A stretch of DNA of 64,000 bases from the IMG/VR virus record IMGVR_UViG_3300042549_005931, positions 205,134 to 269,133 of that record; one strand, 5' to 3'. Position numbers and translations under genes: made by a program. Position 1 is the stretch's first letter; every line of letters begins with the position of its first letter. The notes beneath the pieces are model-generated. The model searched no databases, had not been told where the DNA came from, and was given only the letters and a program-made list of their open reading frames with translations. This document shows, in pieces, positions 46,340-64,000 of this stretch.

Positions 46340-46345
46340 ATTGTA

Positions 46346-46720: not shown

Positions 46721-46785
46721 AATATATTTCTTTTACAATAAATATTGGTACAATAAAAAAACCCACCTAATGGTGGGTTTTTATG

Positions 46786-47721: not shown

Positions 47722-47722
47722 A

Positions 47723-48643
47723 TTATTTTTCTTTTATTAGTTGAACGTTAAATTTTGTTTTTTCATTAATCATACGAATTGTTAATAAAGTATCACGTAG
47801 TGAAAACTTTGGATTGAAGTAGTACCCGTTACCAATGTACTCATGACACGGCTTCATCTCCTTACCCAATTGTGACCTCCATATTATACCCTCCAATTTT
47901 TTAGGACCAATCTCCTTAACCAACCGAAACATACTATCCTTGTTATTCTTACCCTTAATGTGTTTCCCCCTATATACGAAAGATACTGTGGACGCTTTTT
48001 CACGTTGAGTCTTAATGTCCACCACAATTGGTTGCTCAATAACAGATACCGGTACTTCAATCACCTTATTACAAGACTCAATAAATTTCAATACATGCTT
48101 ATATGATGTACCCTCCAATAAATTGTGTTCTTTAAAGTAGAAATTAACATCTTCCTGTTTAATACTCACAGACATACCAACCTTATCATTGTTCATGTTG
48201 GATAACTTCGTACCATTTTGATAACTCAACTTTAATGATTGATTATTTGTAATAACATCCTTATTCACACAATAATACTTGGCCTTAAAGTTATCATTCG
48301 AATTAACAAAACATAAAATGAAATAATCAAATTTTTGCCACCCACGAATGTTACGAATACTGTAAGTACCCTGTTTACTGATAAATGAAATCTTTAACTC
48401 CGAGTATTTGGTTTTACCAATACGACAATCACCTAACTCTAATGCCGGTGATACCTCTACCATTCCATTATCGGAATCGTAACAAACCTTCTTCGGGAAT
48501 AATGACCCGTAAACGTTGGGTGTACATTTATATGATAAACCACAGATGAATTCATCCATCGGTAAATCATAATCAGACCCATCAACGTTGTTTGAAATGG
48601 ACTTACGTTCCTTCGCCATCTCAATGTAATGTTTTCTTTTCAT
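47723..48643 (-). CDS. hypothetical protein
   Basis: 306-aa ORF. Confidence 0.65.
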   Translation of the reverse strand: MKRKHYIEMAKERKSISNNVDGSDYDLPMDEFICGLSYKCTPNVYGSLFPKKVCYDSDNGMVEVSPALELGDCRIGKTKYSELKISFISKQGTYSIRNIRGWQKFDYFILCFVNSNDNFKAKYYCVNKDVITNNQSLKLSYQNGTKLSNMNNDKVGMSVSIKQEDVNFYFKEHNLLEGTSYKHVLKFIESCNKVIEVPVSVIEQPIVVDIKTQREKASTVSFVYRGKHIKGKNNKDSMFRLVKEIGPKKLEGIIWRSQLGKEMKPCHEYIGNGYYFNPKFSLRDTLLTIRMINEKTKFNVQLIKEK

Positions 48644-48834
48644 ATATTATTTTTTTTTGATGTCACAAAGATATACGGTTAATTTTTTCCCTCCAAACAA
48701 ATTGGTAAAAAAAATATTCGATTTTCTAAAAAAAAATTATTCGTGGAGGGGAAATATAATATACACAATTATTATATAATGTTCTATTGAGATGTATTGG
48801 ACGTTTATTAACTTTTTAAAGGTTCCTAATTTTT

Positions 48835-49035
48835 TTAAAATTTTCCGGAAATTTTTTTTTCCGATATGGGGGTATATTGGATATTACCGGATTTTTTCCG
48901 GAAAAATTTTCATCGAGGTATTGTCCCCCCTATATAGACCCCCCAAAAAACACTATATAAGGGGGGATACGGGGAGGGGGGTCCCCCCCACATAGGGTGT
49001 AGGGGGTATGTCACCCCGGTAACGTTCCCCCACAG
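48835..49035. other. G/C-homopolymer palindromic element at the strand switch (candidate terminus/pac/origin)
   Basis: TTTTCCGGAAA palindromes; CCCCCCTATATAG/CTATATAAGGGGGG inverted repeat; G-tracts. Confidence 0.55.
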
Positions 49036-49139
49036 TTTAGGGCGTCCTATTCTTCAGACTCTGTAAAAAAATATTACCTTACCTATTGTATATTAAATTG
49101 TAATCAGTTATATTTGTGTGTACCAAATGTAATAATGAA

Positions 49140-49247
49140 ATGAGAAATCAAAAAAAGAGAGATATCTCTCACGACCTTTCCCTCGATGTTATCGGTGTAA
49201 CTATCTTGGGTATGATTGTATGTATGTTCTTATCCTTAATCCTTTAA
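49140..49247 (+). CDS. 35-aa TM peptide
   Basis: MRNQKKRDISHDLSLDVIGVTILGMIVCMFLSLIL*. Confidence 0.55.
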   Translation: MRNQKKRDISHDLSLDVIGVTILGMIVCMFLSLIL

Positions 49248-49251
49248 TGTT

Positions 49252-49440
49252 ATGATGAATAGTTTAAAAAAATCTTTGTTGTTTGGTGGGGTAATCATAT
49301 CCTTTATTGGAATTTTATATCACGTTATCCAAATGATATCAACGAATGAGTTTGTTCATTTTGTATGTTTCTTTTTATGGATGGTTATTAGTGGTGGTCT
49401 TGTCCTATGGTTTGGTCACGAAGAAAATAAGTATTCTTAG
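49252..49440 (+). CDS. small 2-TM protein
   Basis: Two hydrophobic segments. Confidence 0.65.
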   Translation: MMNSLKKSLLFGGVIISFIGILYHVIQMISTNEFVHFVCFFLWMVISGGLVLWFGHEENKYS

Positions 49441-49480
49441 TTCGATTTTTTGTGTTTAATTTTTGTTGTTAGCGATTTTT

Positions 49481-49515
49481 AAAAATCCCTCGGTCTTATA
49501 GGTCGGGGGATTTTT
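49481..49515 (+). terminator. intrinsic terminator (near-copy at 51049-51081)
   Basis: AAAAATCCCTCG-GTCTTATAGGT-CGGGGGATTTTT. Confidence 0.75.
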
Positions 49516-49928
49516 GTTTAAGGAGAATTCTCTACAAGGTTGTAAAGGTGAAAAACTTACCGGGACAATATACCCCGGTAACATATTTTCAGGAACCTGT
49601 TGGTGAGGTCATCGGAACCTTCCGATAGTGTAACGGGAACCTTCCGTAAATTACTCAACCTGGTAATGTTTATCACCCGGACGACCGGTTAATAATTTCT
49701 CAAAAAAAATGTAACCTGGTAATGTTTTCGTGAAGAGAAAAAGTTTTTTCTGTTTTCATTTTTCAACCTGGTAATGTTTTTAAACAAAAGGGGACGTCTG
49801 GTTTTTTTCTTATTTAGAATGAATATAAATTTCATGGGGGTATTGTGTATTCAAGATAAAATCGTTATATTTGTTCACGGTTTTAAAGTAAACCTCAACA
49901 TCGGAAATGGTTCCGAGTTGTCACTCTA

Positions 49929-50237
49929 ATGTTTAATGTTATGGTCTATACCAAAGAAATTATCCAAGAGAAGTTGTCATCAGACATTCGTTGGATTGAG
50001 AGAGGTGTTCTTGTTTTGTTCGGTCGTCAAACCGAGGATGAGAAATCTTCACAAGTTACCAAGTGGGAAAATGGTCGTGGGTTCAATAGTTCAGATAGTC
50101 GTTATCTGACTTATGTTTCAAAGTACCTAATGGGTGGTCGTCATCTATCGGGTAGACATCTTGAAAAGGTGTCCTTGAAGTTACCAAAGTATTGGAAACA
50201 GATTCAAGAAGAAATTCAATTAAAGGGGGGTAGTTAA
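49929..50237 (+). CDS. early phage protein (RQTEDE...NGRGFN motif)
   Basis: 102-aa ORF; no Ala. Confidence 0.75.
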   Translation: MFNVMVYTKEIIQEKLSSDIRWIERGVLVLFGRQTEDEKSSQVTKWENGRGFNSSDSRYLTYVSKYLMGGRHLSGRHLEKVSLKLPKYWKQIQEEIQLKGGS

Positions 50238-50711
50238 CCCCTCTTTTTTTGTGTCTGAAGTGAAAACTTTACCGGGATGATAACTTATATGGTTTAAGGA
50301 ATTATCGTGTCTTAAATCAAAGATTCATCCTGGTAAAGTTTGTCTGGTTCTCATCTGGTTTTTTTTCTGTGTGTTTGGTAATGTATCCTGGTAAACTTTT
50401 GTTTATTTTCCGGTCCGGATGTAACCTTACATCTATTGGTAATACAACCTGGTAAAGTTTATGGGACGAGAAAAAAAATATCATAATATTCTTGTTTTAT
50501 ATACCGGTTTGCCCTACCTTTGTATTGTACCAAATGAGATAATGAAATGAAATAGTCGAAACACAAACTGACAAATAAAAAATAAAAGAAGGAGATGAGG
50601 TTGTTAAAGTTTACCGGGTTGAAAAAGCTTCACCGGTCAGGAACCCTCATAACTTTACCAGGATAAATCCGTCTAAGAAGAAAACAATCACACATTAAAT
50701 TTATAAAACGT

Positions 50712-51023
50712 ATGTATATTACCTTAACTAATTCAAAGTCAAAAAGAAAAACTATTATCAATTGGGGACAAGTTCATTCTTGTTATGAGTTGTTGGATAG
50801 AGAAACGAGAAGTAGAGTAACTAAGATTAACTTTAGTAAAGATAGTTACATCATTGTATCGGAGAAGTTGGAGGACATCCACAAACTATTAACGAAATTA
50901 AACTTTGGTTTATCCCAAGATGTTGAGTGGGATAGTGAACCGAATTTCGATGAGGTTATCGAAGATGAGTATAACACGAACCGTAGAGGAAATTACCGGG
51001 AACGTGATTACAATAGATTTTAG
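50712..51023 (+). CDS. early hypothetical protein (possible FlbD-like small beta domain)
   Basis: YITLT...IIN...TKINF...YIIVSE; no Ala. Confidence 0.6.
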   Translation: MYITLTNSKSKRKTIINWGQVHSCYELLDRETRSRVTKINFSKDSYIIVSEKLEDIHKLLTKLNFGLSQDVEWDSEPNFDEVIEDEYNTNRRGNYRERDYNRF

Positions 51024-51255
51024 ATTGTCAAAAGAGTAGTGTAGATTAAAAACCCTCAATCTTATAGGTTGGGGGTTTTTTGTCGCCTTTAGAAAAAAGG
51101 TGTATTACACTATGGGGGTATTGTATTACACATAAGGGTCGTATTACGTATCCCGGTAAAATAAGGTACCAGGTCCTGACGGTCATGGTCTTGAAAATAA
51201 ATTTATTATGGAGTGTTGTATATTAAGAGAATAGTGTTATATTTGTGAGAACAAA

Positions 51256-51585
51256 ATGATAAATGATATGAGAACTTTTTCAAGAACTTACTACACAGAG
51301 AAACTGAACATTACGATTAGAATAAAAAGAGATGAATTATGTTCGATGGGTTGTCGATTGACAATAAAAGATAGAATGAAAAGAGATTATTGGGGTATGG
51401 ATAGAATTGTTTATTCACAATTTTACAACGATAAGAAGATGTTTACAAAATATCGGAGACAAATGATTGAAACAAAAGTACCGGGAAAGGTGGTTAATGA
51501 AATCATTGACGATATTAAGATGAACCTTAGGTTTGAAAAAGTTGTGGTGTATCAACCAATCGAAACAAAAATGTTTTGGGATTAA
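51256..51585 (+). CDS. early hypothetical protein
   Basis: 109-aa ORF; no Ala. Confidence 0.7.
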   Translation: MINDMRTFSRTYYTEKLNITIRIKRDELCSMGCRLTIKDRMKRDYWGMDRIVYSQFYNDKKMFTKYRRQMIETKVPGKVVNEIIDDIKMNLRFEKVVVYQPIETKMFWD

Positions 51586-51741
51586 TTACCGGGATTTTAT
51601 CCCGTATGAGGTTATCCCGGTAAATTAATGAACCGGGTCCTGACCCGGTCATGGTTGTTATTTAGAATCATTATAAATTTCATTGGGGTATTGTATATTA
51701 AATTAAAAGAGTTATATTTGTATCAATTAAATGATAATGAT

Positions 51742-52551
51742 ATGAAACTAAATGACAAATCCTTAATTAATGTATTGGACAGTAAAGGGTTCAAAGAACA
51801 CCATTTATCGTGGACACAAAAAAATGTTGAGTATTTTTTTACTCACTATGATAAGTTCATGGAAAAATATGGTGATGATAATATTTTTGAGAATTTTTCT
51901 TGTAAAGAGTATTTTTATTCACAAAAAGTTACAAGAAGATTAATTTTTTCAAAAAAGTCTTTGAGTAATTTGGATAACTACCAAGTACCAAAAGAAATAA
52001 GAGTGGAAGTATTAAGAACATTACCTAATCGAGTGGACTTGATACAATTAAATAATGATGAAGTAGTAAAGTATGTAAAAACCGATAAAATGGTTTGTGT
52101 TACTTTTAATATCGAAGATAACCATACTAATGAAATCAAAACGTTTTTCTTTTCAATCAATTTAGAAACGGGTTATGTTTCGTATGATAATTACGATTAT
52201 CAAACTAATAGAGAGATTGAGTTTAATGAAATGAAAGAAAAGTATTACAACAAGTTTATGGTTGTGGTTACTTATTTGGAATTAACCCCCGTTACTTATT
52301 CAATCATTGAGGGTCAAAGAAGTTACGGAACAAAGAAAGAAGATAAGGTAAAGAACGAAACAAATAAACGTTTCATTATGGTAAAAACTAATTGGAACGT
52401 GGAAACAATTAGTCTATTCGATATTCATGTTCGAGGTCATTGGAGATTACAACCTCACGGAGTAGGTCGTTCACAATACAAGTACATCTACATTCAACCT
52501 TTTGAAAAAGGTATTACAAGAAGATTATCACAAAGAGAGTTGGTTTCGTAA
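51742..52551 (+). CDS. early protein with C-terminal VRGHWR motif
   Basis: Restarted at MKLNDK; 269 aa; no Ala. Confidence 0.75.
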   Translation: MKLNDKSLINVLDSKGFKEHHLSWTQKNVEYFFTHYDKFMEKYGDDNIFENFSCKEYFYSQKVTRRLIFSKKSLSNLDNYQVPKEIRVEVLRTLPNRVDLIQLNNDEVVKYVKTDKMVCVTFNIEDNHTNEIKTFFFSINLETGYVSYDNYDYQTNREIEFNEMKEKYYNKFMVVVTYLELTPVTYSIIEGQRSYGTKKEDKVKNETNKRFIMVKTNWNVETISLFDIHVRGHWRLQPHGVGRSQYKYIYIQPFEKGITRRLSQRELVS

Positions 52552-52736
52552 CCAACTTTTTTTTTGTCCTGAGATGGAACAATTTACCGGGATGTTCTAA
52601 AAGTATTACGTCCCGGTAAACTAATTACCTGAGACTCATCTCAAGTTGGTCAAAAAAAAATTAAATTATTTTTTCATATTGTGTTGTATATTAATTTATT
52701 ATGACTTATATTTGTTCACACAAAACAAATAATGAA

Positions 52737-52940
52737 ATGGAAAAAGTTAATGTAGTCCAAACAAGGTACAAGAATCTCACTAATGGTATGAGAGGTACGT
52801 TCAAATTATCCGATGGTACACAAACCAAATTCGAGGTATTCGACAATGGGGAAGTGAAACAAACGGGTACAACCGAAGCTAATCTGTCGGTAACATTCCC
52901 ACACTTAATTGAGTTAGTTCACTTTTTCACCAACCAATAA
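52737..52940 (+). CDS. early hypothetical protein
   Basis: Restarted at MEKVNV. Confidence 0.65.
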   Translation: MEKVNVVQTRYKNLTNGMRGTFKLSDGTQTKFEVFDNGEVKQTGTTEANLSVTFPHLIELVHFFTNQ

Positions 52941-53033
52941 AAATGAAAAGTTTACCGGGGTGGTTAATAGAATTCATAGAATTCCTATTACTCTTATGTG
53001 TATTTATATCTTATTCAGTTAAACTTATCTATA

Positions 53034-53222
53034 ATGGAAAAGACACAACTAATCGGTAAGAGAATCCGAATCAATCACATGGACGACATGTTACCCGTAC
53101 CTGATGGGACAGAAGGGATAATTACCGGGATTGACGACATCGGACAAATACAAGTGAAATGGGATAATGGAAGTACCTTATCCGTAATAGATGATATTGA
53201 TGACTACGAAATCTTAAACTAA
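53034..53222 (+). CDS. DUF4314-like protein
   Basis: GTEGIITGIDDIGQIQVKWDNGSTL. Confidence 0.8.
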   Translation: MEKTQLIGKRIRINHMDDMLPVPDGTEGIITGIDDIGQIQVKWDNGSTLSVIDDIDDYEILN

Positions 53223-53395
53223 TGAACGAACAATTTGTAAAATACATAATGGATATGTTAGAAACTTATCCACAACATAGAAACGATATTCGAGATTTGT
53301 TCAGACTTTGTAAGGACGAAATTAGGGAGGGTGGTTCCCCACAACACGAAATGGACTTATGTCGTAATGACATTGAGGAGTTGGTGAAGGGTTAG
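53222..53395 (+). CDS. 57-aa early protein
   Basis: TAATG overlap; MNEQFVKYIM...ELVKG*. Confidence 0.65.
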   Translation: MNEQFVKYIMDMLETYPQHRNDIRDLFRLCKDEIREGGSPQHEMDLCRNDIEELVKG

Positions 53396-53558
53396 AAAGT
53401 TTACCGGGATAAAGTCTGTATTACTTGTCCCTATCGTATTACATCCTGGTAATATTTTTCCCATCTCCTCGATGAGTGGAGTAAAAAAAATATATCATAT
53501 AATACTTGTTAATATTATAATTGTTTTATAATTTTACTAAACAAAAAATGATATTATA

Positions 53559-54056
53559 ATGAAAAAAAATCAATTAAAAGGTATTTTTACTGAATTAAAT
53601 GAAACTATCACACGTAAGAGTGCATTTAATTCTTTTATTGAAACGGAGAACATTTCAACCGATGTTACTTTGGAAATGTCAAGAATTGGTCTCATTCGTA
53701 AAAATGCATATAAACAATTACAAGAATTAAAAACTGATTATATCAATCTGATTAACGACAAGAAGGTTAAAGAATTGTTTGAGAAGTTTGAGAAGTTAGA
53801 AACTGCAATTGTCCAACATAGAAGTATATTAGCGACAGAAGTTAAATTGGGTTTAATAAATCAAAAGAGAGGTAGAAGTGAAACAAGTTACGTAATTGCT
53901 CGAGCACCCTTCTATCACCCAAACAAAGTGAAATCAGAAATTTCTGTGTATTTAGGTAAGACCGAAATTTTAGGTAATGATTTGGTAAAGTTATCCAATG
54001 ACAATGAGTTTATGAAGAGAGCTGAATTAGAATTGGTTTCATCAATGTTGCGTTAA
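53559..54056 (+). CDS. hypothetical protein, compositional outlier
   Basis: 165 aa with 7 Ala, unlike its neighbours. Confidence 0.7.
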   Translation: MKKNQLKGIFTELNETITRKSAFNSFIETENISTDVTLEMSRIGLIRKNAYKQLQELKTDYINLINDKKVKELFEKFEKLETAIVQHRSILATEVKLGLINQKRGRSETSYVIARAPFYHPNKVKSEISVYLGKTEILGNDLVKLSNDNEFMKRAELELVSSMLR

Positions 54057-54271
54057 AGATATTGACAATAAAACTTTACCGGGACAACGTCCCAATATAG
54101 TTACATCCTGGTAAAGTATTTGGTGTCGTTACATCAGTCGGTTCTTCCTTATTTAGAATGATTATAAATTTCATTAAAGTATAAAAATATTTTAGGTTAT
54201 ATTAGTATAAGTCGTATTAAATGACGACCTTTGTTAAGTCGATAATGACACAGAACCTTAAAAGTTTTAAA

Positions 54272-54829
54272 ATGGAAACTTTAATGAATGAGAATGGTGT
54301 AATCACCAAAAATGATTTGGTCTTAATTACTAAGACACAAATGTTAGGTCTGTTTTTGGGAGTAACAAAACCCGAAATGATTAACTTGATAACGGAAACC
54401 AATGTAAAAACCAACAAAACGGGTAACCCCTATTACAAACAACTTGTGAAGAAGTCGAAGTGTAACTATTTGTTATGTTCGGATTATACTACAAGGGTAA
54501 ATAATAACCGAGTTAAAGAGGGTAAAGAAACGGATTTTGTTTCAGAAAAGTCAAGTGGTAAATTTCATATTTCCCCTTGTGTATTGATGGATGAAAAAAC
54601 ACAAACAAAACACTACCTAATGGTGGAGAGGTTTGTGGAGGTTAAACCAAAGGTTCAGTATTTTTTTAATGAAGAACCGATTGAGTTTGATATGTTCAAA
54701 CAATTCTTATCACCAATTAGTGAAAACAAATCACAAGGGTTGGATAGGAAAGTAATTGTAAATACTCCTTTGTTCGATTCGATTGTAGGATTCACTTTCA
54801 GAGGTCGTAAGTATAGTGTAATTGAGTAG
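54272..54829 (+). CDS. early hypothetical protein
   Basis: Restarted at METLMNE; no Ala. Confidence 0.72.
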   Translation: METLMNENGVITKNDLVLITKTQMLGLFLGVTKPEMINLITETNVKTNKTGNPYYKQLVKKSKCNYLLCSDYTTRVNNNRVKEGKETDFVSEKSSGKFHISPCVLMDEKTQTKHYLMVERFVEVKPKVQYFFNEEPIEFDMFKQFLSPISENKSQGLDRKVIVNTPLFDSIVGFTFRGRKYSVIE

Positions 54830-54856
54830 TTCGTTTTTTTCATAGTTTGGTGGTTA

Positions 54857-54888
54857 AAAGGGTAGGACAATGTTCTACCTTTTTTTTT
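54857..54888 (+). terminator. shared cassette terminator (near-copies at 56174, 57253, 60884)
   Basis: AAAAGGGTAGGACAATGTTCTACCTTTTTTTT. Confidence 0.8.
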
Positions 54889-55090
54889 GTCTGATGTTCT
54901 GAGATGGTAAAAGTTTACCGGGATAAGTTAAGTATTACACGGGGGACGAAGAAGACTGGAAAACTTTACCAGGATGGATTTGTCCCGGTAAATTTCCTAC
55001 CTGTCGTTACTGTGTCAGGATTTGTCAAAAAAAATTAAATCTTTTTTGGTATAAGTGTTGGAATTGTAATACCTATTTTGTAATTTAGAT

Positions 55091-55450
55091 ATGTCAAATA
55101 AAAACAATGATATGAATACGAAAACCGTTTACAATGTAATGAGAGGAATTGAACCTTTCACACAAAGAGAATTTGATGTTCACCAAACATTAAAAGTTCT
55201 AACCCACAACAAACTTATTTGGATAACGTGGGGAGTCAATCTTCGAAGTATCTGTGGACTTGAACGTAAGTGTCTTGTCTTCAAACCCAACGGACAATAT
55301 TTTAAAGACTTTGTCTGTGTAACTCTTGGATGGGATGATGTTTACCAGGTTCATTTTATGAACGACAAGTACAAAGTCGTTAAGTCAATTGAAGGTGTGT
55401 ACTTTGATATGTTGGTGGATGTGATTGACGGATACATTGAAACTCGATAA
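55091..55450 (+). CDS. early hypothetical protein
   Basis: 119-aa ORF; no Ala. Confidence 0.72.
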   Translation: MSNKNNDMNTKTVYNVMRGIEPFTQREFDVHQTLKVLTHNKLIWITWGVNLRSICGLERKCLVFKPNGQYFKDFVCVTLGWDDVYQVHFMNDKYKVVKSIEGVYFDMLVDVIDGYIETR

Positions 55451-55571
55451 TTTACCGGGAGGAGAAATCCTCCCGTTAACAAGAGCTACGGTACCAAACT
55501 TTACCGGGATAAAAATAAGTTTTGTAAAATGAAATTAATGTTATATCTTTGTAACCCAAACAAATGACACA

Positions 55572-56153
55572 ATGAATATTAGAGAAGAAAGAATTGACAA
55601 TTACATTTTGAGATTATTTTATGATGAGAGTCCGACGAATCCTCGAGAGGACTACAATCTTACCAGGATGGTGTGTTTCCACAAGAGATACGACTTGGGG
55701 GATAGTCACGACTACAAACACGATGACTACGATAGTTGGGATGAGATGGAGAAGAACATTACCAGGATGGAGAACCCTATTGTTATCAAACCCTTGTATA
55801 TGTACGAACATGGTGGAGTTACTATTAAGACAAGTCCGTTTGGTGATAGATGGGATAGTGGTCAAATTGGTTTTGTCTTTATCCGTAAGGATGATGTACG
55901 GAATGAATTCTCAATCAAGAGATGTGGTCAGAACATGGTGGAGAGATGTGATGTATTACTTGAAGGGGAGGTTGACGTGTATGACAAGTACCTACAAGGA
56001 CAAGTATATGGGTATGAGATAGGTAAAATAAATGAAGATGGTCAGGAAGAAGGTTTAGAAAGATGTGGAGATTATCTTGATGAAGACCAATGTGTTCACG
56101 ATGGAATGGTATCATTGAATTGGTTTAAAGAAAATGAGAAAGTATTGGTTTAG
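55572..56153 (+). CDS. early acidic protein (LYMYEHGG...RWDSGQIG motif)
   Basis: 193-aa ORF; no Ala. Confidence 0.75.
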   Translation: MNIREERIDNYILRLFYDESPTNPREDYNLTRMVCFHKRYDLGDSHDYKHDDYDSWDEMEKNITRMENPIVIKPLYMYEHGGVTIKTSPFGDRWDSGQIGFVFIRKDDVRNEFSIKRCGQNMVERCDVLLEGEVDVYDKYLQGQVYGYEIGKINEDGQEEGLERCGDYLDEDQCVHDGMVSLNWFKENEKVLV

Positions 56154-56398
56154 GTTTTCCTTATTATTGTTTAAAAGGGTAGGACGATGTTCTACCTTTT
56201 TTTTTGTATTACACTTGAGGAGTCTGAAGTCAGGACCTGAACCAAAAGTTTACCGGGATGAGATGTATTACCCCGGTAAAGTTATGAGTCGGAGAAAAAT
56301 TATTTGGTCTTCCAAAAAATAATTAAATTAATTTTTGACAAGTAGTAGGATATTAACTTACTATCAGTTATATTTGTGAACATTTAAACAATAATGAT

Positions 56399-56644
56399 AT
56401 GTCAGTACAACAAAAAGAAATGATTGAAAAGTGGGACAAGGTTTCACAAGATGTTTTGAAAGGTAGAACTATTGTAGAAGTTCGTTACCTTAACGATGAG
56501 GAAATGGAAATGATGGGTTGGTATAATAGACCAATTTGTTTTTTCTTGGACAATGGTGTTAGTTGTATCCTATCATCTGATGATGAGGGGAACGATGGTG
56601 GAGTTTTATTCTACGGAGAAAATGGAGTGTTACCAACCCTTTAA
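56399..56644 (+). CDS. early hypothetical protein
   Basis: 81-aa ORF; no Ala. Confidence 0.72.
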   Translation: MSVQQKEMIEKWDKVSQDVLKGRTIVEVRYLNDEEMEMMGWYNRPICFFLDNGVSCILSSDDEGNDGGVLFYGENGVLPTL

Positions 56645-56655
56645 ACAATAATGTT

Positions 56656-56871
56656 ATGTTAATTACAAGAACAAGTCAGATTTCAAGAACCGATTTTACA
56701 ATGGAGTTGGATATTACCTACGACCAATTGGATAGGATTAATAATCGTTACGAGACCAAAGAACTCATTCAGAACATTGTACCAAACTTGTCGAAGGAGG
56801 AACGGGAGTTTTTAATTACCGGGATAACCCCAAAAGAATGGAATGAATTGTTTAACCCAATTGATGTGTAA
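56656..56871 (+). CDS. early hypothetical protein
   Basis: 71-aa ORF; no Ala. Confidence 0.72.
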   Translation: MLITRTSQISRTDFTMELDITYDQLDRINNRYETKELIQNIVPNLSKEEREFLITGITPKEWNELFNPIDV

Positions 56872-56872
56872 A

Positions 56873-57013
56873 ATGGAAGTTAAAATCGAAGACCTTATCA
56901 AATTACTTGAAGAACAAGTTAGTAAGGGAGTAACCAAAGTACAACTTAATGGTACTTTAATGTCCGAAGAGGATGGTAACTTAATTATTTTGTCCACCGA
57001 AAAACAAATGTAA
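56873..57013 (+). CDS. 46-aa early protein
   Basis: MEVKIEDLIKLLEEQ...; fills the gap in the operon. Confidence 0.65.
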   Translation: MEVKIEDLIKLLEEQVSKGVTKVQLNGTLMSEEDGNLIILSTEKQM

Positions 57014-57014
57014 A

Positions 57015-57230
57015 ATGAAAGTAGTATCAGTCCGTATTACAGAACAACCAAAAGACTTGTTCGACCCACTACCAAGAGTATTCGTAACAACCGAAGATGG
57101 TGTGGAACATTTCCTTTACCAATATTACCCCGATGAGATTAGTTTCACGGAGAGTGAGTTGATGGGATTAACATTAGAAGAGTGTGGTAGATTATATACC
57201 GAGAAAGATATTAGATATTTGAGGTCGTAG
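57015..57230 (+). CDS. early hypothetical protein
   Basis: 71-aa ORF; no Ala. Confidence 0.72.
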   Translation: MKVVSVRITEQPKDLFDPLPRVFVTTEDGVEHFLYQYYPDEISFTESELMGLTLEECGRLYTEKDIRYLRS

Positions 57231-57540
57231 TGGTTTTTTTGTTTGTGGTTATAAAAGGGTGGGACAATGTTCCACCTTTTTTTATGGACTGAAGTCAGGA
57301 ATCTTCTGAGATGGAAAAGTTTACCGGGATGGTGGAGTGTATTACGTCCTGGTAATGTTTGTCTGGCGCAGCTCTGGTCCATCAGGTTATTTATCCCGGT
57401 AAACTTATGAGTCACAGAAAAATTCTTGGATGTTCCAAAAAAAATAATTGTTTTTTTTTCATATAACATTTGTAATTGTAATATTAATTGACTAATTTAG
57501 TGTTGTAGATAATGGTATCTACATTAACCCCTTTAATGTT

Positions 57541-57876
57541 ATGAGTACAATGGTAGTAAATCAAGAAGTCGAGTTTTCAATGGATGATATTGATAACGAG
57601 GTGTATTTTGAAATCACGGGTAAAATGGTTTTCAACGAGATTTTGGTTCAAGAAATTTTTGATGTGATTGTGGAATCGGATTGGTTCGTTCAAGGTAACA
57701 AGACCGAAGGTCTATTGTCAATCGGTCAGAGATTGAAAAATGGTATCGAGGTTAATCTCGATTGGAAGTCAATCACAATGGGTGAGGATTGGGATTCGGA
57801 TGAAACGGAAGAACACGAAAAGGATTTTATCCTATCGTGGGATGAGGATAATAAGATTGTCCTTACACCAAGGTAA
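57541..57876 (+). CDS. early acidic protein
   Basis: 111-aa ORF; no Ala. Confidence 0.72.
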   Translation: MSTMVVNQEVEFSMDDIDNEVYFEITGKMVFNEILVQEIFDVIVESDWFVQGNKTEGLLSIGQRLKNGIEVNLDWKSITMGEDWDSDETEEHEKDFILSWDEDNKIVLTPR

Positions 57877-58079
57877 TACGAAGGGAGAACGAAAGTTCTC
57901 CTTTTTTTTGTCCCTGATGGTAAAAGTTTACCGGGATACCCTGGTAAAGTTTTCTACCCGTCACTGTCGACAGGTGATAAAAATTAATTAATTTTTTTTG
58001 TTACAAGGTGTTGTTTATATCGAAAATTAAACTATCTTTGTGTGTGGATAATGGTGTCCACAATAATCCAATAAACAAA

Positions 58080-58988
58080 ATGGAAACACAACTCGTTTTA
58101 AATGACCGTATTACACAATTATTAGACCAAACCAACCTGAATTGGAAGGTGAAAGAATCACCTATCTATACTAAGGTAGATGACAATGAGATTTTAGTAT
58201 CAGATAAAAAAGTATTACTTCGTGAAGACACACACGAGATTTTAGGTTTACACTCTGATGGATATGTACCGTTCCAAAATTATGAGATGTTAGAATTACT
58301 TGATAAGGTTTCTCAACAAACGGGTTTACCAATTCATAGAGGTGGTTTGTTTGGTAACGGTAAGAAGGTGTATATCCAACTTCAATCACACGAGTTCAGA
58401 ATTCAGAATGTTGGTGGAGTTTGGGACACTATCTCAGGATATGTTACCGGGATAAACTCATTCGATGGTTCCACTTCATTATCATTTGGTCCTAGTACCA
58501 AAACAATCTCATGTCAAAATACTTTCTTTGGAGCTTATAAGGAAATGGGTACAAAGATTCGTCACACAAAAAACATGGGGGTAAAGATTGACGAGGTGTG
58601 TAGACGAATTGAAGGTGTGTTGGTAGAGGAGAGAAACAACTTCGAAAATATCAAGAAGATGTCTGAAAGTCCTTTTGAGATGAACACATTAGATTCTGTA
58701 ATACGAACTATGTTTGACCTTGACCGTAATGTGGATTTAAAAGATACTGATAAATTATCGGGGGTAACTCGTAATAAATTATCTCGATTCTATATCGACC
58801 TTAACGGTGAACTTCGTGAGAAGGGTAACAATGTTTGGGGATTGATGTCGGGTGTAACAAAATATACTACTCACTCTGTGATTAAGGGTGATAACTCCGA
58901 GAAAAAGATGTTTGGTAGTACGGGTAATCGTGAGAGAAAGATTTTCTCCGACCTTGTAAACTATACCAACCACTTGGAACTCGTTTAA
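58080..58988 (+). CDS. DUF932/DUF945-family protein
   Basis: LNWKV...LLREDT..ILG...YVPFQN...GKKVY...NSFDGS...TISCQNT; 1 Ala in 302 aa. Confidence 0.8.
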   Translation: METQLVLNDRITQLLDQTNLNWKVKESPIYTKVDDNEILVSDKKVLLREDTHEILGLHSDGYVPFQNYEMLELLDKVSQQTGLPIHRGGLFGNGKKVYIQLQSHEFRIQNVGGVWDTISGYVTGINSFDGSTSLSFGPSTKTISCQNTFFGAYKEMGTKIRHTKNMGVKIDEVCRRIEGVLVEERNNFENIKKMSESPFEMNTLDSVIRTMFDLDRNVDLKDTDKLSGVTRNKLSRFYIDLNGELREKGNNVWGLMSGVTKYTTHSVIKGDNSEKKMFGSTGNRERKIFSDLVNYTNHLELV

Positions 58989-58992
58989 GATT

Positions 58993-59160
58993 TGTTGTCG
59001 ATAGGTGAAAACCTAAATTAACTCACCGATGTCTTGGTGAGAGAAGAATAAGGATAAGTATTACAGGGTGTCCCTACCGACAATGTTGGACTTAAAATAT
59101 TCACCCCGTATTACCGAGTGTGGGAGGTTTTGTAAAATCATTAACCCACATCCTTATTAA
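58993..59160 (+). ncRNA. putative pseudoknotted RNA downstream of the DUF932 gene
   Basis: TTGTCG/CGACAA, TAGGT-GAAA-ACCTA, AATAAGGAT/ATCCTTATT, TGTGGG/CCCACA; terminator at 59168-59198. Confidence 0.5.
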
Positions 59161-59415
59161 AGACACTAAAACCCTCTACCCAACGGAGGGTTTTTTTATT
59201 GCCCTCAGGAACCTGAAGACAGGACCTGGGTGAAAAGTTTACCGGGATATCCTGGTAATGTTTCCACCATGCGCTGGAGCTGCGCTGTAATCGTCCCGGT
59301 AAAGTATTGGAGCTGCGCTGTACTGTGTTAATTAAAAAAATTATTTAACAAAGTAGTATGATATTAACTTAATAGTGTTATCTTTGTAAATCGTTTCACA
59401 TAAACAATAAATGAT

Positions 59416-59751
59416 ATGAAAAGTGGTAACATTGTGGATTTAAGTAACCTCGATACACGGGATTTAATCGAGGAGTTACAGAACAGGGGGTATATGACCG
59501 GTTTGTTATTTTGTAGGGAGGATGTAGACCTTCAACTTGAAAGTTTAAATGATGGGTATCGTGGTCTAAACCTTACCTTGACTGATGAGGAAAAGGACGA
59601 AATCCTTGAAGGAGACTTACCTATTGATTGGACTTGTGAAAGAATCAATGAGAGTATCTATGATGGTGTCTTTAATTTTTTCAGTGAGGAGATTAATAAG
59701 TGGGAGGAAAAAGATTTGGGTGAGAAGATGAGAAACGGATTTGGAAACTAA
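59416..59751 (+). CDS. early acidic protein
   Basis: 111-aa ORF; no Ala. Confidence 0.72.
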   Translation: MKSGNIVDLSNLDTRDLIEELQNRGYMTGLLFCREDVDLQLESLNDGYRGLNLTLTDEEKDEILEGDLPIDWTCERINESIYDGVFNFFSEEINKWEEKDLGEKMRNGFGN

Positions 59752-60031
59752 TAAATTACCAGGATATATGGAAACATTTCAATTTTACAAAGACGAAAAG
59801 ATGACGATTTGGTATCGTGGTAAGTTCGAGGTCGAAGCTAACTCGGAGGAGGAAGCTATCGAGATGGTTAAGGAACTTGAAAAGACAAATAAGTTAGATA
59901 ACTACGATGTTTATTGGGAAATTTTGGATGACACTATGGAAGGGTTAACGGTGGGAGATAATGGTGGTTATTCCACAGAAGAAATATACACAGGTAGTGG
60001 AGACATAATTTGGGCCAATGGAAAGGAATAG
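59741..60031 (+). CDS. early acidic protein
   Basis: FEVEANSEEEAIE motif. Confidence 0.72.
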   Translation: METNKLPGYMETFQFYKDEKMTIWYRGKFEVEANSEEEAIEMVKELEKTNKLDNYDVYWEILDDTMEGLTVGDNGGYSTEEIYTGSGDIIWANGKE

Positions 60032-60242
60032 TGTAATCAAGAAACTCAGGGACGGTGAACCATTGGAACTTTACCGGGATGGATTGTTCATTACTCTCCA
60101 ACTAAACAAACGACATAAAAGAATTTGTTGGGAACGATGGGTATCTGTTAACAAAACCTCTTGGATGAATTGGAATTTATTCTTATCTTTACGGGACGTA
60201 ATACAAATCTATAATGATTATGAAAAAAGAAAAACTGATTAA
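60018..60242 (+). CDS. early hypothetical protein
   Basis: Overlapping operon ORF. Confidence 0.65.
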   Translation: MERNSVIKKLRDGEPLELYRDGLFITLQLNKRHKRICWERWVSVNKTSWMNWNLFLSLRDVIQIYNDYEKRKTD

Positions 60243-60543
60243 GAAAATCCAACAGGTGTTGGATGACTTGGACACTCGTAGTATTAATGTACATGAGTTA
60301 GACACGGAATCATCGATTAACATTGGTGATTTGGCCAACGGTGATATAACGGAATGTGTAGAAACACTTCGTTACGATGATGTATCCACCATAGTTTACC
60401 ACAACGGTAACGAGATAGAGTGGAGTGATAAAGATTACCGGGACTTACCTCTCAATACATTAGAGGAAATCCTTGAAGCTTTACAATACTATAAAATAGG
60501 TTTTGACAAAACATTAGACGTAATACGAGATGAAAACTATTAA
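60220..60543 (+). CDS. early acidic protein
   Basis: Overlapping operon ORF, restarted at MKKEKL. Confidence 0.68.
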   Translation: MKKEKLIKKIQQVLDDLDTRSINVHELDTESSINIGDLANGDITECVETLRYDDVSTIVYHNGNEIEWSDKDYRDLPLNTLEEILEALQYYKIGFDKTLDVIRDENY

Positions 60544-60823
60544 AACGATTGACCAAATTATTTCAGAGAGTGTAGAAGAGCACGTACTAACTTGTATTGA
60601 CCGGGTTAATAAGGGATTTAAAGTTGTAGAGGTTGAGGTTCCATTAGAATATTCATCCAAAGTGTTTACCTTACTAAACGATGAGATTAGTTATGGTGTT
60701 AGAATGTATGGGTGGAAGTTCGGAGTTTTCTCACAGGGAGAGTTCGAAGGTAAGATGGCTCAAACTATTTTAAAAGAAAACAATAGAGTGTTTAAAAGAT
60801 ATTTTTTAAAATACACTTTATAA
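60530..60823 (+). CDS. early hypothetical protein
   Basis: Overlapping operon ORF. Confidence 0.68.
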   Translation: MKTIKTIDQIISESVEEHVLTCIDRVNKGFKVVEVEVPLEYSSKVFTLLNDEISYGVRMYGWKFGVFSQGEFEGKMAQTILKENNRVFKRYFLKYTL

Positions 60824-61090
60824 TTTGTAAGATGTTACTTATATTTTGATTACAAATTATTTGTGTTCATATTTTGTGTTTGGGAAAAGGGTTGGCAGAA
60901 ATGTCAACCTTTTTTTGTGCTCGTGTATTACCTGTGCACTGTACCTGCACAGCAGTGAAGTTTACCGGGACAACCTGGTAATGTATTACCTGCAGCAACT
61001 GCAGAGCCTTCAGGTAAAAAAAGTTATTAAATAATGTTTGTTATATTGAAAACTATTTTGTAATTTTAATCCATCAAATAAACAAATGAT

Positions 61091-61858
61091 ATGGAATTTA
61101 AAAACTTAACACAAACAAAAAAGGATTTAGGACTTAACTATTTAGGTTCGGTTAGTAAAACCACCAAACATATTAAGTCAATTGAGTACAACGAATTGGT
61201 TTACACTATCTACTTGTCACCTGCAGACAGTAGTGGGTATGAGGTGTGTCCATTACGAAACGACGAATGTACCGACCTTTGCCTTAATGAGTCCGGTATG
61301 AACCGAATGAGTATGAATGACGAATTGATTAATAGAAGTCGTATCAAAAAAACTAAATTGTTTTTTGAGAACCGTGAATACTTTGTCAAGTGGATGGTAT
61401 ACGAAATCGAATCCACCAAACTAAAAGCTGAAAAACTTGGTATGAGTTTTAGTGTACGTATCAATAATACTTCAGACATTAATCCTTTATCATTTTATCT
61501 TGAAGTTAACGGAAAAAAATTAAATGTATTGGATTTATTCCCCGATGTACAATTTTACGATTATACAAAAGTTCCCAACCGAATGAAGTTAATGATGTTA
61601 TATCCTAATTACGATTTGACATTTTCTTATGACGGTTATAATAAAGATACTTGTCTACAGATGTTAGAAAATAATGTTAGGGTGGCCGTTGTGTTTGATA
61701 AGTTACCGGGAGAATTATGGGGGTACAAAGTTATCGATGGTGACTTGTATGACATGAGATATCGAGATGAGAAAAATGTAATTGTCGGACTGAAGTTCAA
61801 ACGAGTTCGAAAGAAACTACATAAGGATTATAAGTTCGTAATACAAAACCCACAATGA
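61091..61858 (+). CDS. GP88-like protein (Cys-motif, radical-SAM-like)
   Basis: EVCP...CTDLCL...VRINNTSD...QFYDYTK...YDLTFS...IDGD...VGLKFK. Confidence 0.78.
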   Translation: MEFKNLTQTKKDLGLNYLGSVSKTTKHIKSIEYNELVYTIYLSPADSSGYEVCPLRNDECTDLCLNESGMNRMSMNDELINRSRIKKTKLFFENREYFVKWMVYEIESTKLKAEKLGMSFSVRINNTSDINPLSFYLEVNGKKLNVLDLFPDVQFYDYTKVPNRMKLMMLYPNYDLTFSYDGYNKDTCLQMLENNVRVAVVFDKLPGELWGYKVIDGDLYDMRYRDEKNVIVGLKFKRVRKKLHKDYKFVIQNPQ

Positions 61859-62108
61859 TGTGGGTTTTTTTATGCACTCAGGAATCTGAAGGCAGGACCT
61901 GGATGAAAAGTTTACCGGGATATCCTGGTAAAGTTCCATTTGGGAAACACAGCAGCGCAAAACCATCCCGGTAAAGTTTCCCTGGCAACAACAGCAGCGC
62001 TGACTTCAGAAAAAAAATTAAAATATTTTTTACCTATGTGTTGTGATTTAGTAAAAATGTATTATCTTTGTACAAGTAATAAGTCAAACAATTTAAACTT
62101 TTAATGTT

Positions 62109-62657: not shown

Positions 62658-62719
62658 TATAAAAAAATAATCGGGATATCGTTTGGAATAATGGTATCCC
62701 TTTTATAATTTTGTAAACG

Positions 62720-62968
62720 ATGAAAGATTTATTCAATAATTCAAGACCAGTTCAGATTGAAATCGGTGAATGGTGGTTCAACGGGAGATTCATCCAAAAA
62801 CAGGTGCATCCGTTGCTTAGTCCTTATGTATCCTTTAATGATAATGAGGATGGTTATATGGTTCAAACTCACACAACCTTTAAGGAAGCAACTAAGTATT
62901 GTTTGGATAATCCTTGTAATACCCCACAACACCAACCAAAAGATTTTATAAGTTCATTTAAAAACTAA
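62720..62968 (+). CDS. hypothetical protein
   Basis: 82-aa ORF; TAATTTTG upstream. Confidence 0.65.
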   Translation: MKDLFNNSRPVQIEIGEWWFNGRFIQKQVHPLLSPYVSFNDNEDGYMVQTHTTFKEATKYCLDNPCNTPQHQPKDFISSFKN

Positions 62969-62974
62969 TATCAT

Positions 62975-63938: not shown

Positions 63939-64000
63939 CAGGTGGAGTATTTACCGGGATTGTAGGTACCTCCGAAAAAATTAGTTCATACGATAAGTTT

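What the first reader, a model, noticed from the sequence alone, without database searches (positions are those of the whole stretch)
48835..49035. G/C-tract palindromic landmark at the strand switch: candidate genome end or origin
Seen: in AT-rich DNA, two TTTTCCGGAAA palindromes, an inverted repeat CCCCCCTATATAG (48925-48937)/CTATATAAGGGGGG (48953-48966), and G6-G4-G6 tracts with G-quadruplex potential. It lies exactly where gene orientation flips and where the GpC-free, repeat-rich early region begins. Inference: terminus/pac site, making the right-hand region the first DNA injected.
Basis: partly seen in the sequence, partly recalled or inferred. Interest (0 to 1): 0.6.

Follow-up and report, generated by a model that had tools for sequence, protein, structure and literature searches.

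The report
Conserved G/C-tract landmark heading phage early genes
A roughly 200-base patch of G-runs, C-runs and palindromes is a real, single-copy signpost conserved across about 90 related lake jumbo-phage contigs, and it sits where a block of early genes almost free of the dinucleotide GC begins, so it most likely marks the genome end that enters the cell first, though a replication origin is not excluded.

Summary
The window is the last 64 kb of a 269-kb lake jumbo-phage contig with a T4 gp17-like terminase and Bacteroidota-type promoters.

- **Exceptional in this genome.** Five of the genome's ten G/C runs of 6 or more lie in the landmark. TTTTCCGGAAA occurs nowhere else in the window.
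- **Conserved.** The core (C6, about 25 nt, TATATAAGGGGGGATACGGG(G)AGGGGGG) occurs in 91 of 101 IMG/VR stretches that hold its 15-mer, and in 0 of 120 bacterial control hits. It is single-copy in the four genomes examined in full.
- **Syntenic.** In three collinear genomes it lies between a leftward gene block and a rightward block of small genes with host-type promoters.
- **GpC purge.** GpC drops to an observed/expected ratio of about 0.07 for 10.6 kb to the right. Early proteins there are almost alanine-free.
- **DnaA boxes.** 27 of 61 relatives carry DnaA boxes just right of the core. This copy has none.
- **G-quadruplex.** This copy lacks a canonical four-tract motif; 32 of 57 relatives have one.

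Best reading (about 0.38): a cis-acting genome-end or packaging-junction signal at the end that enters first, with a T5/SPO1-like early segment. Main rival (about 0.27): a replication origin. No raw reads were available and assembled contigs cross the site, so termini are unproven.

The parts
47723..48643 (-). First gene of the leftward block (306 aa, no family match)
   Evidence: Leftward block of 21 ORFs, 34917-48643.
48666..48698 (-). Bacteroidota-type promoter-like site (TTG, 20-nt spacer, TAtcTTTG) for the leftward gene
   Evidence: motif scan only; inferred.
48837..48910 (.). Two A/T-flanked palindromes, AAAATTTTCCGGAAA(T/A)TTTT, 53 nt apart
   Evidence: I2, 93% complementary; unique in the window. 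Conserved as TTTTCC(G/A/C)(G/A)AAAAATTT in relatives.
48920..48967 (.). Imperfect inverted repeat: ATTGT-C6-TATATAG, 15-nt spacer, CTATATAA-G6
   Evidence: centroid hairpin. Only the C6/G6 part is kept across the family; the A/T stem is not, and the C6 is replaced by G5 in L378/L379.
48959..48982 (+). Most conserved core, AAGGGGGGATACGGGGAGGGGGGT
   Evidence: The 15-mer occurs in 101 IMG/VR stretches, 91 of them with the full landmark context. 0 of 120 bacterial hits have the context. One copy per genome.
48983..49035 (.). Variable G/C-tract region (C7, GGG, G5, C4, C5). G-to-C run junctions are always interrupted, so there is no GpC
   Evidence: Variable among lineages but always rich in G5/C5 runs flanked by TA.
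49014..49023 (-). First copy (CCCCGGTAAC) of the lineage-specific early-region motif TTTACCGGG. The equivalent place holds DnaA boxes or other lineage motifs in relatives
49086..49117 (+). First rightward early promoter (TTG, 20-nt spacer, TAtaTTTG), member of a repeated promoter family
   Evidence: (D13/D14). 11 of the genome's 29 plus-strand matches lie within 14 kb to the right of the landmark.
48616..59200 (.). GpC-purged segment (observed/expected about 0.07) starting at the landmark. Its proteins are nearly alanine-free
   Evidence: The same tendency is seen in G001 and in 10 of 25 lineages.
50268..63950 (.). Array of the intergenic motif AAAGTTTACCGGGAT, often as inverted pairs, between terminators and promoters
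   Evidence: 34 of the genome's 37 copies lie here.

Best explanation
The landmark is a unique cis-acting DNA site that marks the 'start' of the phage genome.

**Proposed mechanism**
- It is the junction or cleavage signal that the packaging machinery recognises on concatemers.
- Mature DNA therefore has a fixed end here.
- The segment to its right is probably terminally repeated, as in T5 and SPO1, and enters the host first.
- From that end, host RNA polymerase reads a series of strong Bacteroidota-type promoters rightward into small takeover and anti-defence genes.
- This DNA is naked in the cell before any protective function exists. It has therefore been purged of GpC, apparently the target of a GC-recognising nuclease, for about 10.6 kb.
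- The C-tract / A+T / G-tract core would be the protein recognition site. The adjacent lineage-specific repeats, or DnaA boxes in relatives, would be accessory binding sites.

**Shown:** uniqueness, conservation, synteny, the boundary position, the promoter array and the GpC purge.

**Inferred:** the cleavage, the terminal repeat and the order of entry.
For: - **Unique in the genome.** Half of all G/C runs of 6 or more in 269 kb lie here, and the palindrome is unique in the window.
- **More conserved than its flanking genes.** A 287-kb relative aligns at 77% identity only here within a 12-kb query.
- **A real family.** 91 of 101 IMG/VR stretches holding the core 15-mer carry the full architecture, against 0 of 120 bacterial chance hits. 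A search anchored on the left palindrome box found 26 family copies: 17 hold the exact 15-mer, 5 a near variant and 4 lack the G core.
- **Single-copy and syntenic.** There is one full copy in each of the four genomes. In three collinear genomes, leftward genes lie to the left and 15-33 kb of small rightward genes to the right.
- **Host-type promoters start right after it.** The first lies about 100 nt to the right, and 11 of the genome's 29 plus-strand matches lie in the next 14 kb.
- **GpC purge starts at the landmark.** Observed/expected is 0.07 over 10.6 kb, and the G+C-rich landmark itself has none. 12 of 16 ORFs there encode no alanine. G001 shows 0.14-0.24. Across the family the median is 0.27 to the right against 0.46 to the left. 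Avoidance confined to one region implies ordered entry; the T5 first-step DNA is the precedent (10.1101/866236).
- **Layout matches known fixed-end phages.** The SPO1 host-takeover module lies in the terminal region (PMC6873191). The T5 pre-early genes lie in the left terminal repeat, whose untranslated repeat regions are better conserved than its genes (10.1101/866236).
- **Core architecture resembles herpesvirus pac1.** That signal is a T-rich element flanked by G-rich runs, is quadruplex-prone, and is used by a related terminase (PMC13595911).
- **Depth is compatible.** Logan k-mer depth is higher to the right than to the left in all four runs: X2 12.3 to 27.4, X4 about 6 to 14, X1 21.6 (a contig spanning the landmark) to 30.5, X8 about 2.7 to 4. 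This fits a 2x terminal repeat but is not diagnostic.
Against: - **No read-end evidence.** Only assembled Logan contigs were available.
- **Contigs cross the site** in X1, X4, a further Logan run (L369) and a second JGI sample. G001 and G004 appear to assemble as circles: a 30-nt word from one contig end recurs about 135 nt inside the other end, though the overlap is not an exact match. A collapsed terminal repeat would look like this, but so would a permuted genome.
- **The terminase points the other way.** By sequence it matches only T4/RB49 gp17 among solved structures, and its nearest cultured kin are T4-like phages, which package by headful without fixed ends.
- **The depth step has another explanation.** Unitigs from co-occurring relatives share the core node, with other arms at depths 20.5, 4.8 and 4 in X2. 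Strains that share the right arm would give the same step. The tool also warns that depth is one figure per contig.
- **Contig ends inside the landmark are not at one position.** They lie at several offsets (-72, -37, -36, -33, +7 (twice) and +46 nt beyond the 15-mer), close to the conserved core, which fits graph branching rather than physical ends.
- **The GpC purge could instead act on early mRNAs.**
- **The extreme purge is limited to some lineages.** It is weak in G003 and G004.
Confidence: 0.38

Rival explanations
1. It is a replication origin. The landmark would be the site where replication starts, either through host DnaA bound to the adjacent boxes or through a persistent RNA-DNA hybrid or quadruplex formed on the G/C tracts. 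T4 origins, ColE1 and mitochondrial CSB II work in the second way. The A+T-rich stretch 48650-48920 would be the unwinding element.
For: - Exact DnaA boxes are sharply concentrated just right of the core in relatives: 47 in the 0 to +200 bin over 63 distinct loci, against 0-2 in most other bins. 27 of 61 lineages have at least one and 16 have at least two.
- The site is single-copy, conserved and non-coding, with iteron-like GGGGGTA repeats.
- 32 of 57 family copies have a canonical quadruplex motif.
- The cumulative GC-skew minimum of this contig lies at the landmark.
- A T4-like core machinery would fit R-loop origins (established knowledge of T4 oriF/oriG).
Against: - This copy and G001 have no DnaA box beside the core. 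The equivalent place holds a lineage-specific motif that recurs 34 times in early intergenic spacers. Relatives' DnaA boxes also recur at about +1.0 and +1.6 kb. The boxes therefore look like early-region regulatory or titration sites.
- The skew minimum simply follows gene orientation and is not the global minimum in G001, G003 or G004.
- No promoter reads rightward into the G tracts.
- No initiator or replication genes lie nearby.
- This reading does not explain why the GpC purge starts exactly here.
Confidence: 0.27
2. It is a T5-type injection-stop or early-region control site. The landmark would be an internal conserved untranslated region that binds host DnaA or a phage protein. It would pause DNA entry or switch the early block on and off, without being the end itself.
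For: [quoted passage not shown] It has eight DnaA boxes and bounds the first-step DNA (10.1101/866236).
- The landmark shares all of these traits in many lineages.
- It bounds the GpC-purged segment.
Against: - In T5 the stop signal lies at the inner end of the first-step DNA. Here the early genes, their motif array and their orientation run on unbroken past the far edge of the purged segment at about 59.2 kb. The only sharp discontinuity is at the landmark.
- DnaA boxes are missing from this copy.
Confidence: 0.12
3. It is a centromere-like or nucleoid-organising site bound by the nearby ParB-like protein, with the TTTTCCGGAAAA palindromes acting as a parS-like loading site.
For: - A gene with a ParB N-terminal domain lies 3-4 kb to the left (44870-45805). 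It has homologues near the landmark in G004 (-0.8 kb) and G003 (-8.9 kb).
- Close variants carry another ParB_N gene in the right block.
- There are two 16-20 bp palindromes.
Against: - The palindromes vary (CCGG, CTGG, CCCAA), and in one subfamily they recur upstream of other leftward genes as promoter-like sequence.
- G001 has no homologue of this ParB-like protein.
- The invariant part is the G/C core, not the palindromes.
- Many phage ParB_N proteins are nucleases.
Confidence: 0.06
4. It is a promoter for a phage polymerase or sigma factor, or a small structured RNA gene. The core resembles T7/SP6 promoters (CACTATA..GGGAG).
For: The sequence ACACTATATAAGGGGGGATACGGGGAG resembles the initiation region of single-subunit polymerase promoters (recalled resemblance only).
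Against: - No T7-like polymerase domain is found in the contig. That search rang in none of the 14 bacterial and archaeal control genomes, so it is weak evidence.
- There is one copy per 270-335 kb genome, unlike a promoter class.
- No Rfam match even at E <= 1.
- There is no compensatory variation in the stem, and folding is no better than shuffles.
Confidence: 0.05
5. It is chance composition or an assembly artefact, for example a chimeric join at a shared repeat or sequencing poly-G.
For: The core is shared among co-occurring phages and causes graph branching, so chimeras at this node are conceivable.
Against: - The identical junction was recovered in independent assemblies: X1, X4, a further Logan run (L369) and JGI 3300042154.
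- Both flanks are collinear with G001 and G004.
- The runs are short (6-7 bases) and embedded in a conserved context.
Confidence: 0.02

Closest known systems
Phage T5 left terminal repeat: first-step-transfer DNA and its conserved untranslated repeat regions (iss)
   Same: - An untranslated region conserved more strictly than the neighbouring genes, with palindromes, inverted repeats and, in many relatives, DnaA boxes.
- About 10 kb of first-expressed small genes.
- The first-entering DNA is the only T5 DNA still sensitive to EcoRI (and CRISPR-Cas); later DNA is protected by a pre-early function. Davison hypothesises that FST DNA lacks the target sites of a T5 nuclease (10.1101/866236).
   Different: - There is no sequence similarity.
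- The terminase here is T4-like, not T5-like.
- The landmark sits at the promoter-proximal edge of the early block, whereas the T5 iss lies at the inner edge.
- A terminal repeat and two-step entry are not shown here.
- The avoided target is the dinucleotide GpC rather than a hexamer.
[quoted passage not shown]
   Same: An array of many small early genes in a roughly 12-kb segment next to the genome end, with promoters typical of highly expressed genes (PMC6873191). That each short operon has its own strong host-type promoter and terminator is recalled from Stewart et al. 1998, which was not read here.
   Different: - The host phylum and promoters differ.
- No homology was detected.
- Redundancy is not demonstrated here.
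- SPO1 has no known G/C-tract landmark or dinucleotide purge.
Herpesvirus pac1 cleavage/packaging signal
   Same: An A/T-rich element flanked by G- and C-rich homopolymer runs, quadruplex-prone, at the genome terminus, read by a terminase of the same superfamily as T4 gp17 (PMC13595911).
   Different: - This is an analogy of composition only.
- No pac2-like partner was found.
- No cleavage has been mapped.
- This copy lacks a canonical quadruplex motif.
DnaA-box (oriC-type) origins and R-loop origins (T4 oriF/oriG, ColE1, mitochondrial CSB II)
   Same: Clustered exact DnaA boxes beside an A+T-rich stretch in 27 of 61 relatives. G-runs of the kind that stabilise RNA-DNA hybrids (established knowledge).
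   Different: - This copy has no boxes.
- No promoter reads into the G tracts.
- No initiator gene lies nearby.
- The skew signal is explained by transcription.

Membership tests
Fixed genome terminus with direct terminal repeat (T5/SPO1/T7 type) | Read starts or ends pile up at one position | not testable with these tools
   All 20 runs are kept only as Logan contigs. Table 6 is empty by construction.
Fixed genome terminus with direct terminal repeat (T5/SPO1/T7 type) | Two-fold coverage plateau over the repeat, starting at the terminus | tested here: inconclusive
   The right side is deeper than the left in four runs (X2 12.3 to 27.4). Depth is one figure per contig, and strains sharing the right arm would explain it equally.
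Fixed genome terminus with direct terminal repeat (T5/SPO1/T7 type) | Terminase groups with those of fixed-end phages | tested here: not met
   The closest solved and cultured relatives are T4/RB49 gp17-type, at 24-29% identity. No formal tree was built.
Fixed genome terminus with direct terminal repeat (T5/SPO1/T7 type) | Early genes read by host polymerase abut the end and point inward | tested here: met
   The first promoter lies about 100 nt to the right. 11 of 29 plus-strand promoter matches lie within 14 kb, all pointing rightward.
T5-type injection stop signal | Conserved untranslated region with an ordered set of DnaA boxes, repeats and palindromes | tested here: inconclusive
   Palindromes, repeats and conservation are present. 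DnaA boxes occur in 27 of 61 relatives but not in this copy.
T5-type injection stop signal | Lies at the inner boundary of the first-entering segment | tested here: inconclusive
   It bounds the GpC-purged segment, but which boundary is the entry end cannot be told. The early block runs on unbroken across the other boundary, which argues against.
DnaA-dependent origin | Cluster of DnaA boxes next to an A+T-rich unwinding element | tested here: not met
   For this copy there is no exact box within 300 nt; the nearest relaxed matches are at 48261 and 51411. The feature is met in many relatives.
DnaA-dependent origin | Replication-driven strand asymmetry switching at the site | tested here: inconclusive
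   The skew minimum lies at the landmark in G000 but coincides with the flip in gene orientation. It is not the global minimum in three relatives.
Herpesvirus-like pac1 signal | A/T-rich core flanked by G/C homopolymer runs, with cleavage at a fixed distance | tested here: inconclusive
   The composition is met. Cleavage is not testable.
Canonical G-quadruplex motif (four G3+ tracts, loops of 7 or less) | Four tracts with short loops | tested here: not met
   This copy has G6-ATAC-G4-A-G6, then a 13-nt loop to GGG. 32 of 57 family copies do meet the definition.
Known RNA family (Rfam 15) | Covariance-model match | tested here: not met
   No match at E <= 1 in 48300-49500, and none at gathering score.

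The most novel reading that the evidence does not exclude
A clade of T4-like jumbo phages of freshwater Bacteroidota uses ordered, possibly two-step, DNA entry from a fixed end marked by this landmark.

- The first 10 kb to enter has been purged of the dinucleotide GpC so thoroughly that its proteins have lost alanine. This implies a GC-recognising nuclease, from the host or the phage itself, that acts during the interval before the rest of the genome arrives.
- The DnaA boxes or lineage-specific repeats beside the landmark anchor or time this step.

If true, this would be a T5-like strategy that arose independently in a different phage lineage and host phylum, with an unprecedented effect on protein composition.
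Probability: 0.22. Interest if true: 0.8.

Novelty: new variant of a known kind. Interest (0 to 1): 0.6.

Why it matters
- **A reference point for genomes that have none.** These 270-335 kb lake phages are known only from metagenomes. A single, easily recognised cis-element that is syntenic and conserved across about 90 contigs gives a common zero point for annotating and comparing them. It also gives a concrete target for experiments on packaging, entry or replication.
- **Evidence for ordered entry.** Together with the GpC-free, alanine-free early block, it points to ordered DNA entry and to a strong GC-directed defence or offence system in freshwater Bacteroidota. Both can be tested once raw reads or an isolate exist.
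- **A practical warning for assembly.** The core is shared among co-occurring relatives. Assemblies branch, and may form chimeras, at this node.

Tried and rejected
- **Cultured phage records.** Megablast of the 4-kb neighbourhood and blastn of the landmark found nothing.
- **Relatives through the flanking 306-aa protein.** None found in IMG/VR. Relatives were reached through the terminase and the DNA core instead.
- **Bacterial genomes.** 120 hits to the 15-mer, none with the landmark context. Used as a chance control.
- **Rfam.** No family matches.
- **Folding.** The hairpin is the centroid structure, but the energy equals that of shuffles. The A/T stem is not kept by compensatory changes, and the C6 is replaced by G5 in two contigs. 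A hairpin or RNA reading is therefore not favoured.
- **T7-like RNA polymerase and DnaA C-terminal domain.** Neither was found in the contig. The polymerase search also rang in none of its 14 bacterial and archaeal control genomes, so it is weak evidence.
- **Contig ends as evidence of physical ends.** IMG/VR contigs end inside or near the landmark more often than expected. However, they end at several offsets close to the conserved core (distances to contig ends worked out by hand from the ranges), and Logan unitigs show arms from co-occurring relatives at that node. This is graph branching, not termini.
- **IMG/VR 'direct terminal repeat' flag of G003.** It comes from a 144-nt coding tandem repeat and is uninformative.
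- **Read-level test.** Impossible, because no raw-read runs hold this DNA. The single read-laying run gave contig layout and per-contig depth only.
- **Literature.** No paper holds the core sequence in a phage context. The 'moraphage' paper (PMC12619734) describes possibly related Bacteroidota jumbo phages but nothing about ends or origins. Membership was not tested.

Full report
**What the window is.** It is the last 64 kb (205134-269133) of a 269,133-bp IMG/VR virus contig classed as linear and about 81% complete. It comes from a lake metagenome. The G+C content is 32%. The window carries 15 tRNAs, a tmRNA and a GOLLD RNA. The large terminase (contig 181.6-183.4 kb) matches Terminase_6N. Among solved structures it matches only T4/RB49 gp17, and its nearest cultured kin are T4-like phages at 24-29% identity. 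The repeated early promoters fit the Bacteroidota consensus, TTG with an 18-21 nt spacer and then TAnnTTTG. Synteny with two relatives that appear to assemble as circles, G001 (286.8 kb) and G004 (335.6 kb), shows that the contig lacks only some tens of kb between its two ends.

**Checking the observation.**
- TTTTCCGGAAA occurs only at 48841 and 48894 in the 64-kb window, with 0.2 expected by chance.
- The C6TATATAG / CTATATAAG6 inverted repeat is 92% complementary with one bulge.
- The 269-kb genome has ten G or C runs of 6 or more, and five of them lie here. In this genome and in three relatives the landmark is the densest cluster of runs of 5 or more.
- The flip in gene orientation is real: 21 leftward ORFs end at 48643, and rightward ORFs run from 49116 to the contig end.
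- The GpC collapse is real: observed/expected is 0.07 over 48616-59200, against 0.63 elsewhere.

There are two qualifications. This copy has no canonical four-tract quadruplex motif, because a 13-nt loop would be needed. The region also folds no better than shuffled sequence (z = 0.06).

**Conservation.**
- A 12-kb query around the site aligned to the 287-kb relative G001 essentially only at the landmark, at 77% identity over 155 nt.
- The core 15-mer AAGGGGGGATACGGG hits 101 IMG/VR stretches. 91 of them carry the whole architecture: an A/T-flanked TTTTCC(G/A/C)(G/A)AAAAATTT box, GG(T/C)ATT(G/A)(T/A)C6, a spacer of about 25 nt, TATATAAG6ATACG3-6(A)G5-6, and then variable G5/C5 runs.
- Many of these lie on contigs of 200-360 kb from freshwater samples.
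- As a control, 120 hits to the same 15-mer in bacterial genomes include none with this context.
- A search anchored on the left box instead found 26 family copies. 17 hold the exact 15-mer, 5 have one to a few changes and 4 lack the G core.
- A profile of 57 distinct copies finds exactly one full copy in each of four genomes (E 1e-31 to 1e-45). Only the A/T-rich left part recurs, upstream of other leftward genes in G003.
- The site is syntenic in G000, G001 and G004. Leftward genes lie on the left, and 15-33 kb of small rightward genes on the right.
- In G001 one leftward gene intervenes, so the exact strand flip is not essential.

**What lies to the right.**
- The first host-type promoter is at 49086-49117. 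11 of the genome's 29 plus-strand promoter matches lie in the next 14 kb.
- Each short unit consists of a terminator, an inverted pair of AAAGTTTACCGGGAT, an A/T-rich promoter and one or two small genes of unknown function.
- 34 of the genome's 37 copies of that motif lie in 50268-63950. Its first copy sits in the right edge of the landmark, at 49014-49023.
- Relatives have different motifs in the same role: TGCCAAACAA in G004 and TGTAATACG in G001.
- In 27 of 61 lineages the equivalent place holds one to three exact DnaA boxes. That is 47 boxes in the 0 to +200 bin, against 0-2 in most other bins.
- GpC is almost absent for 10.6 kb. 12 of 16 ORFs there have no alanine, giving 0.44% Ala against 4.0% elsewhere. 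G001 shows 0.78% against 3.4%.
- GpC returns abruptly at about 59.2 kb, in intergenic repeats.
- The G+C-rich landmark itself avoids GpC, because every G-run to C-run junction is interrupted by another base.
- Across the family, the 3 kb to the right has a lower GpC ratio than the 3 kb to the left in 8 of 10 lineages where both sides are held. The medians are 0.27 and 0.46.

**Reads.**
- Only Logan contigs exist for the 20 runs that hold this DNA.
- Contigs cross the landmark without change in X1 and X4, in a further Logan run (L369), and in a second JGI sample.
- In X2 the unitigs break at 48952-48981. At that node, short unitigs from co-occurring relatives share the core.
- This explains why several IMG/VR contigs stop at or near the edges of the conserved core (contig ranges).
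- Per-contig k-mer depth is higher on the right in all four runs (X2 12.3 to 27.4). That is what a terminal repeat would give. Strains that share the right arm would give the same, and the tool warns against reading depth this way.

**Interpretation.**

A single-copy, strongly conserved, non-coding site argues for a unique cis-acting function rather than a promoter class or an RNA gene. There is no Rfam match, no compensatory variation and no T7-like polymerase.

I favour a genome-end or packaging-junction signal at the end that enters first (0.38).
- The decisive argument is the GpC purge. It starts at the landmark, includes it, and covers only about 10 kb.
- Avoiding a nuclease target in one region helps a phage only if the rest of its DNA is not yet exposed.
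- This is the logic of the T5 first-step DNA (10.1101/866236). It matches the layout of the T5 left terminal repeat and the SPO1 host-takeover module (PMC6873191).
- The C-run / A+T / G-run core recalls herpesvirus pac1, which is read by a related terminase (PMC13595911).

Several points count against it.
- The terminase is T4-like.
- Relatives assemble as circles and contigs cross the site. Both are also expected for a collapsed terminal repeat.
- There is no read-end evidence at all.

An origin of replication is the main rival (0.27).
- It is supported by the DnaA boxes, the G-rich runs and the A+T-rich flank.
- It is weakened because the boxes are absent here and behave like one of several interchangeable early-region motifs.
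- The skew signal equals gene orientation, and this reading leaves the GpC boundary unexplained.

Lesser rivals are a T5-like internal stop or control site (0.12), a ParB-bound site (0.06), a promoter or RNA gene (0.05) and an artefact (0.02). The end and origin functions are not mutually exclusive.

**Novelty.** I found no description of this element. The recently named Bacteroidota 'moraphages' (PMC12619734) may be kin, but this was not tested. If the favoured reading is right, this is a new variant of a known kind of site: a terminal packaging and entry signal with an early segment behind it. It would occur in a lineage where fixed ends were not expected.

Noticed in passing
window 49929-59200 (ORFs right of the landmark); also G001 +0 to +10.5 kb: Early proteins are almost alanine-free because GpC, and hence GCN codons, is purged. 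12 of 16 ORFs have 0 Ala, including proteins of 307, 202 and 193 aa. Ala is 0.44% here against 4.0% elsewhere, and 0.78% against 3.4% in G001.
   Followed up: partly
window 59189-59320, 60890-61010, 61862-62000: GpC reappears abruptly in intergenic repeats (GAGCTGCGCTGTA twice, CAGCAGCGC twice, CTGCA motifs), while the TTTACCGGGAT units continue. This is a sharp right-hand edge of the GpC-free zone with no change in gene layout.
   Followed up: partly
window 50268-63950: 34 of the genome's 37 copies of TTTACC(G/A)GG lie here, usually as inverted pairs between a terminator and a promoter. G004 uses TGCCAAACAA and G001 uses TGTAATACG in the same role. These are probably binding sites for a lineage-specific regulator.
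   Followed up: partly
window 8088-8470 (+): GOLLD RNA (RF02032, 280 bits, full length) lies next to the tRNA cluster.
   Followed up: no
window 10336-10737 (+) and 92-5468: A phage-encoded tmRNA (87 bits; ARAGORN tag GNVYKNMEIAGILATSNVAVA) and 15 tRNA genes (14 by ARAGORN, 15 by Rfam).
   Followed up: no
L376 and L188 (same contig, IMGVR_UViG_3300020204_002611); L381, L384, L385: One relative has a full landmark plus a second, truncated left half that ends at ...CCCTTATAAG and is followed by a rightward gene. Three other contigs keep only the left box and ATTGTCCCCC, followed by what looks like a related gene (both N-termini share an R-x-F-I-L-x-R-L stretch by eye; not compared formally). This may be an insertion or recombination hotspot inside the landmark.
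   Followed up: partly
window 51628-52551, 58008-58988, 61091-61858; L363/L364: Precomputed Pfam hits in the right block: a faint AcrVA2-like hit (307 aa), DUF932 (the 302-aa called gene within this ORF), GP88 (255 aa) and DUF4314. Close variants carry an extra ParB_N-like 248-aa gene there.
   Followed up: no
window about 46750-46950: Assemblies from several samples break or branch here, beside the 124-aa Collar/tail-fibre-like gene (46346-46720). This suggests a strain-variable spot.
   Followed up: no
G003 contig ends (L190, L206): The IMG/VR 'direct terminal repeat' call for this 321-kb relative rests on a 144-nt tandem repeat in coding sequence, not on a true genome repeat.
   Followed up: yes
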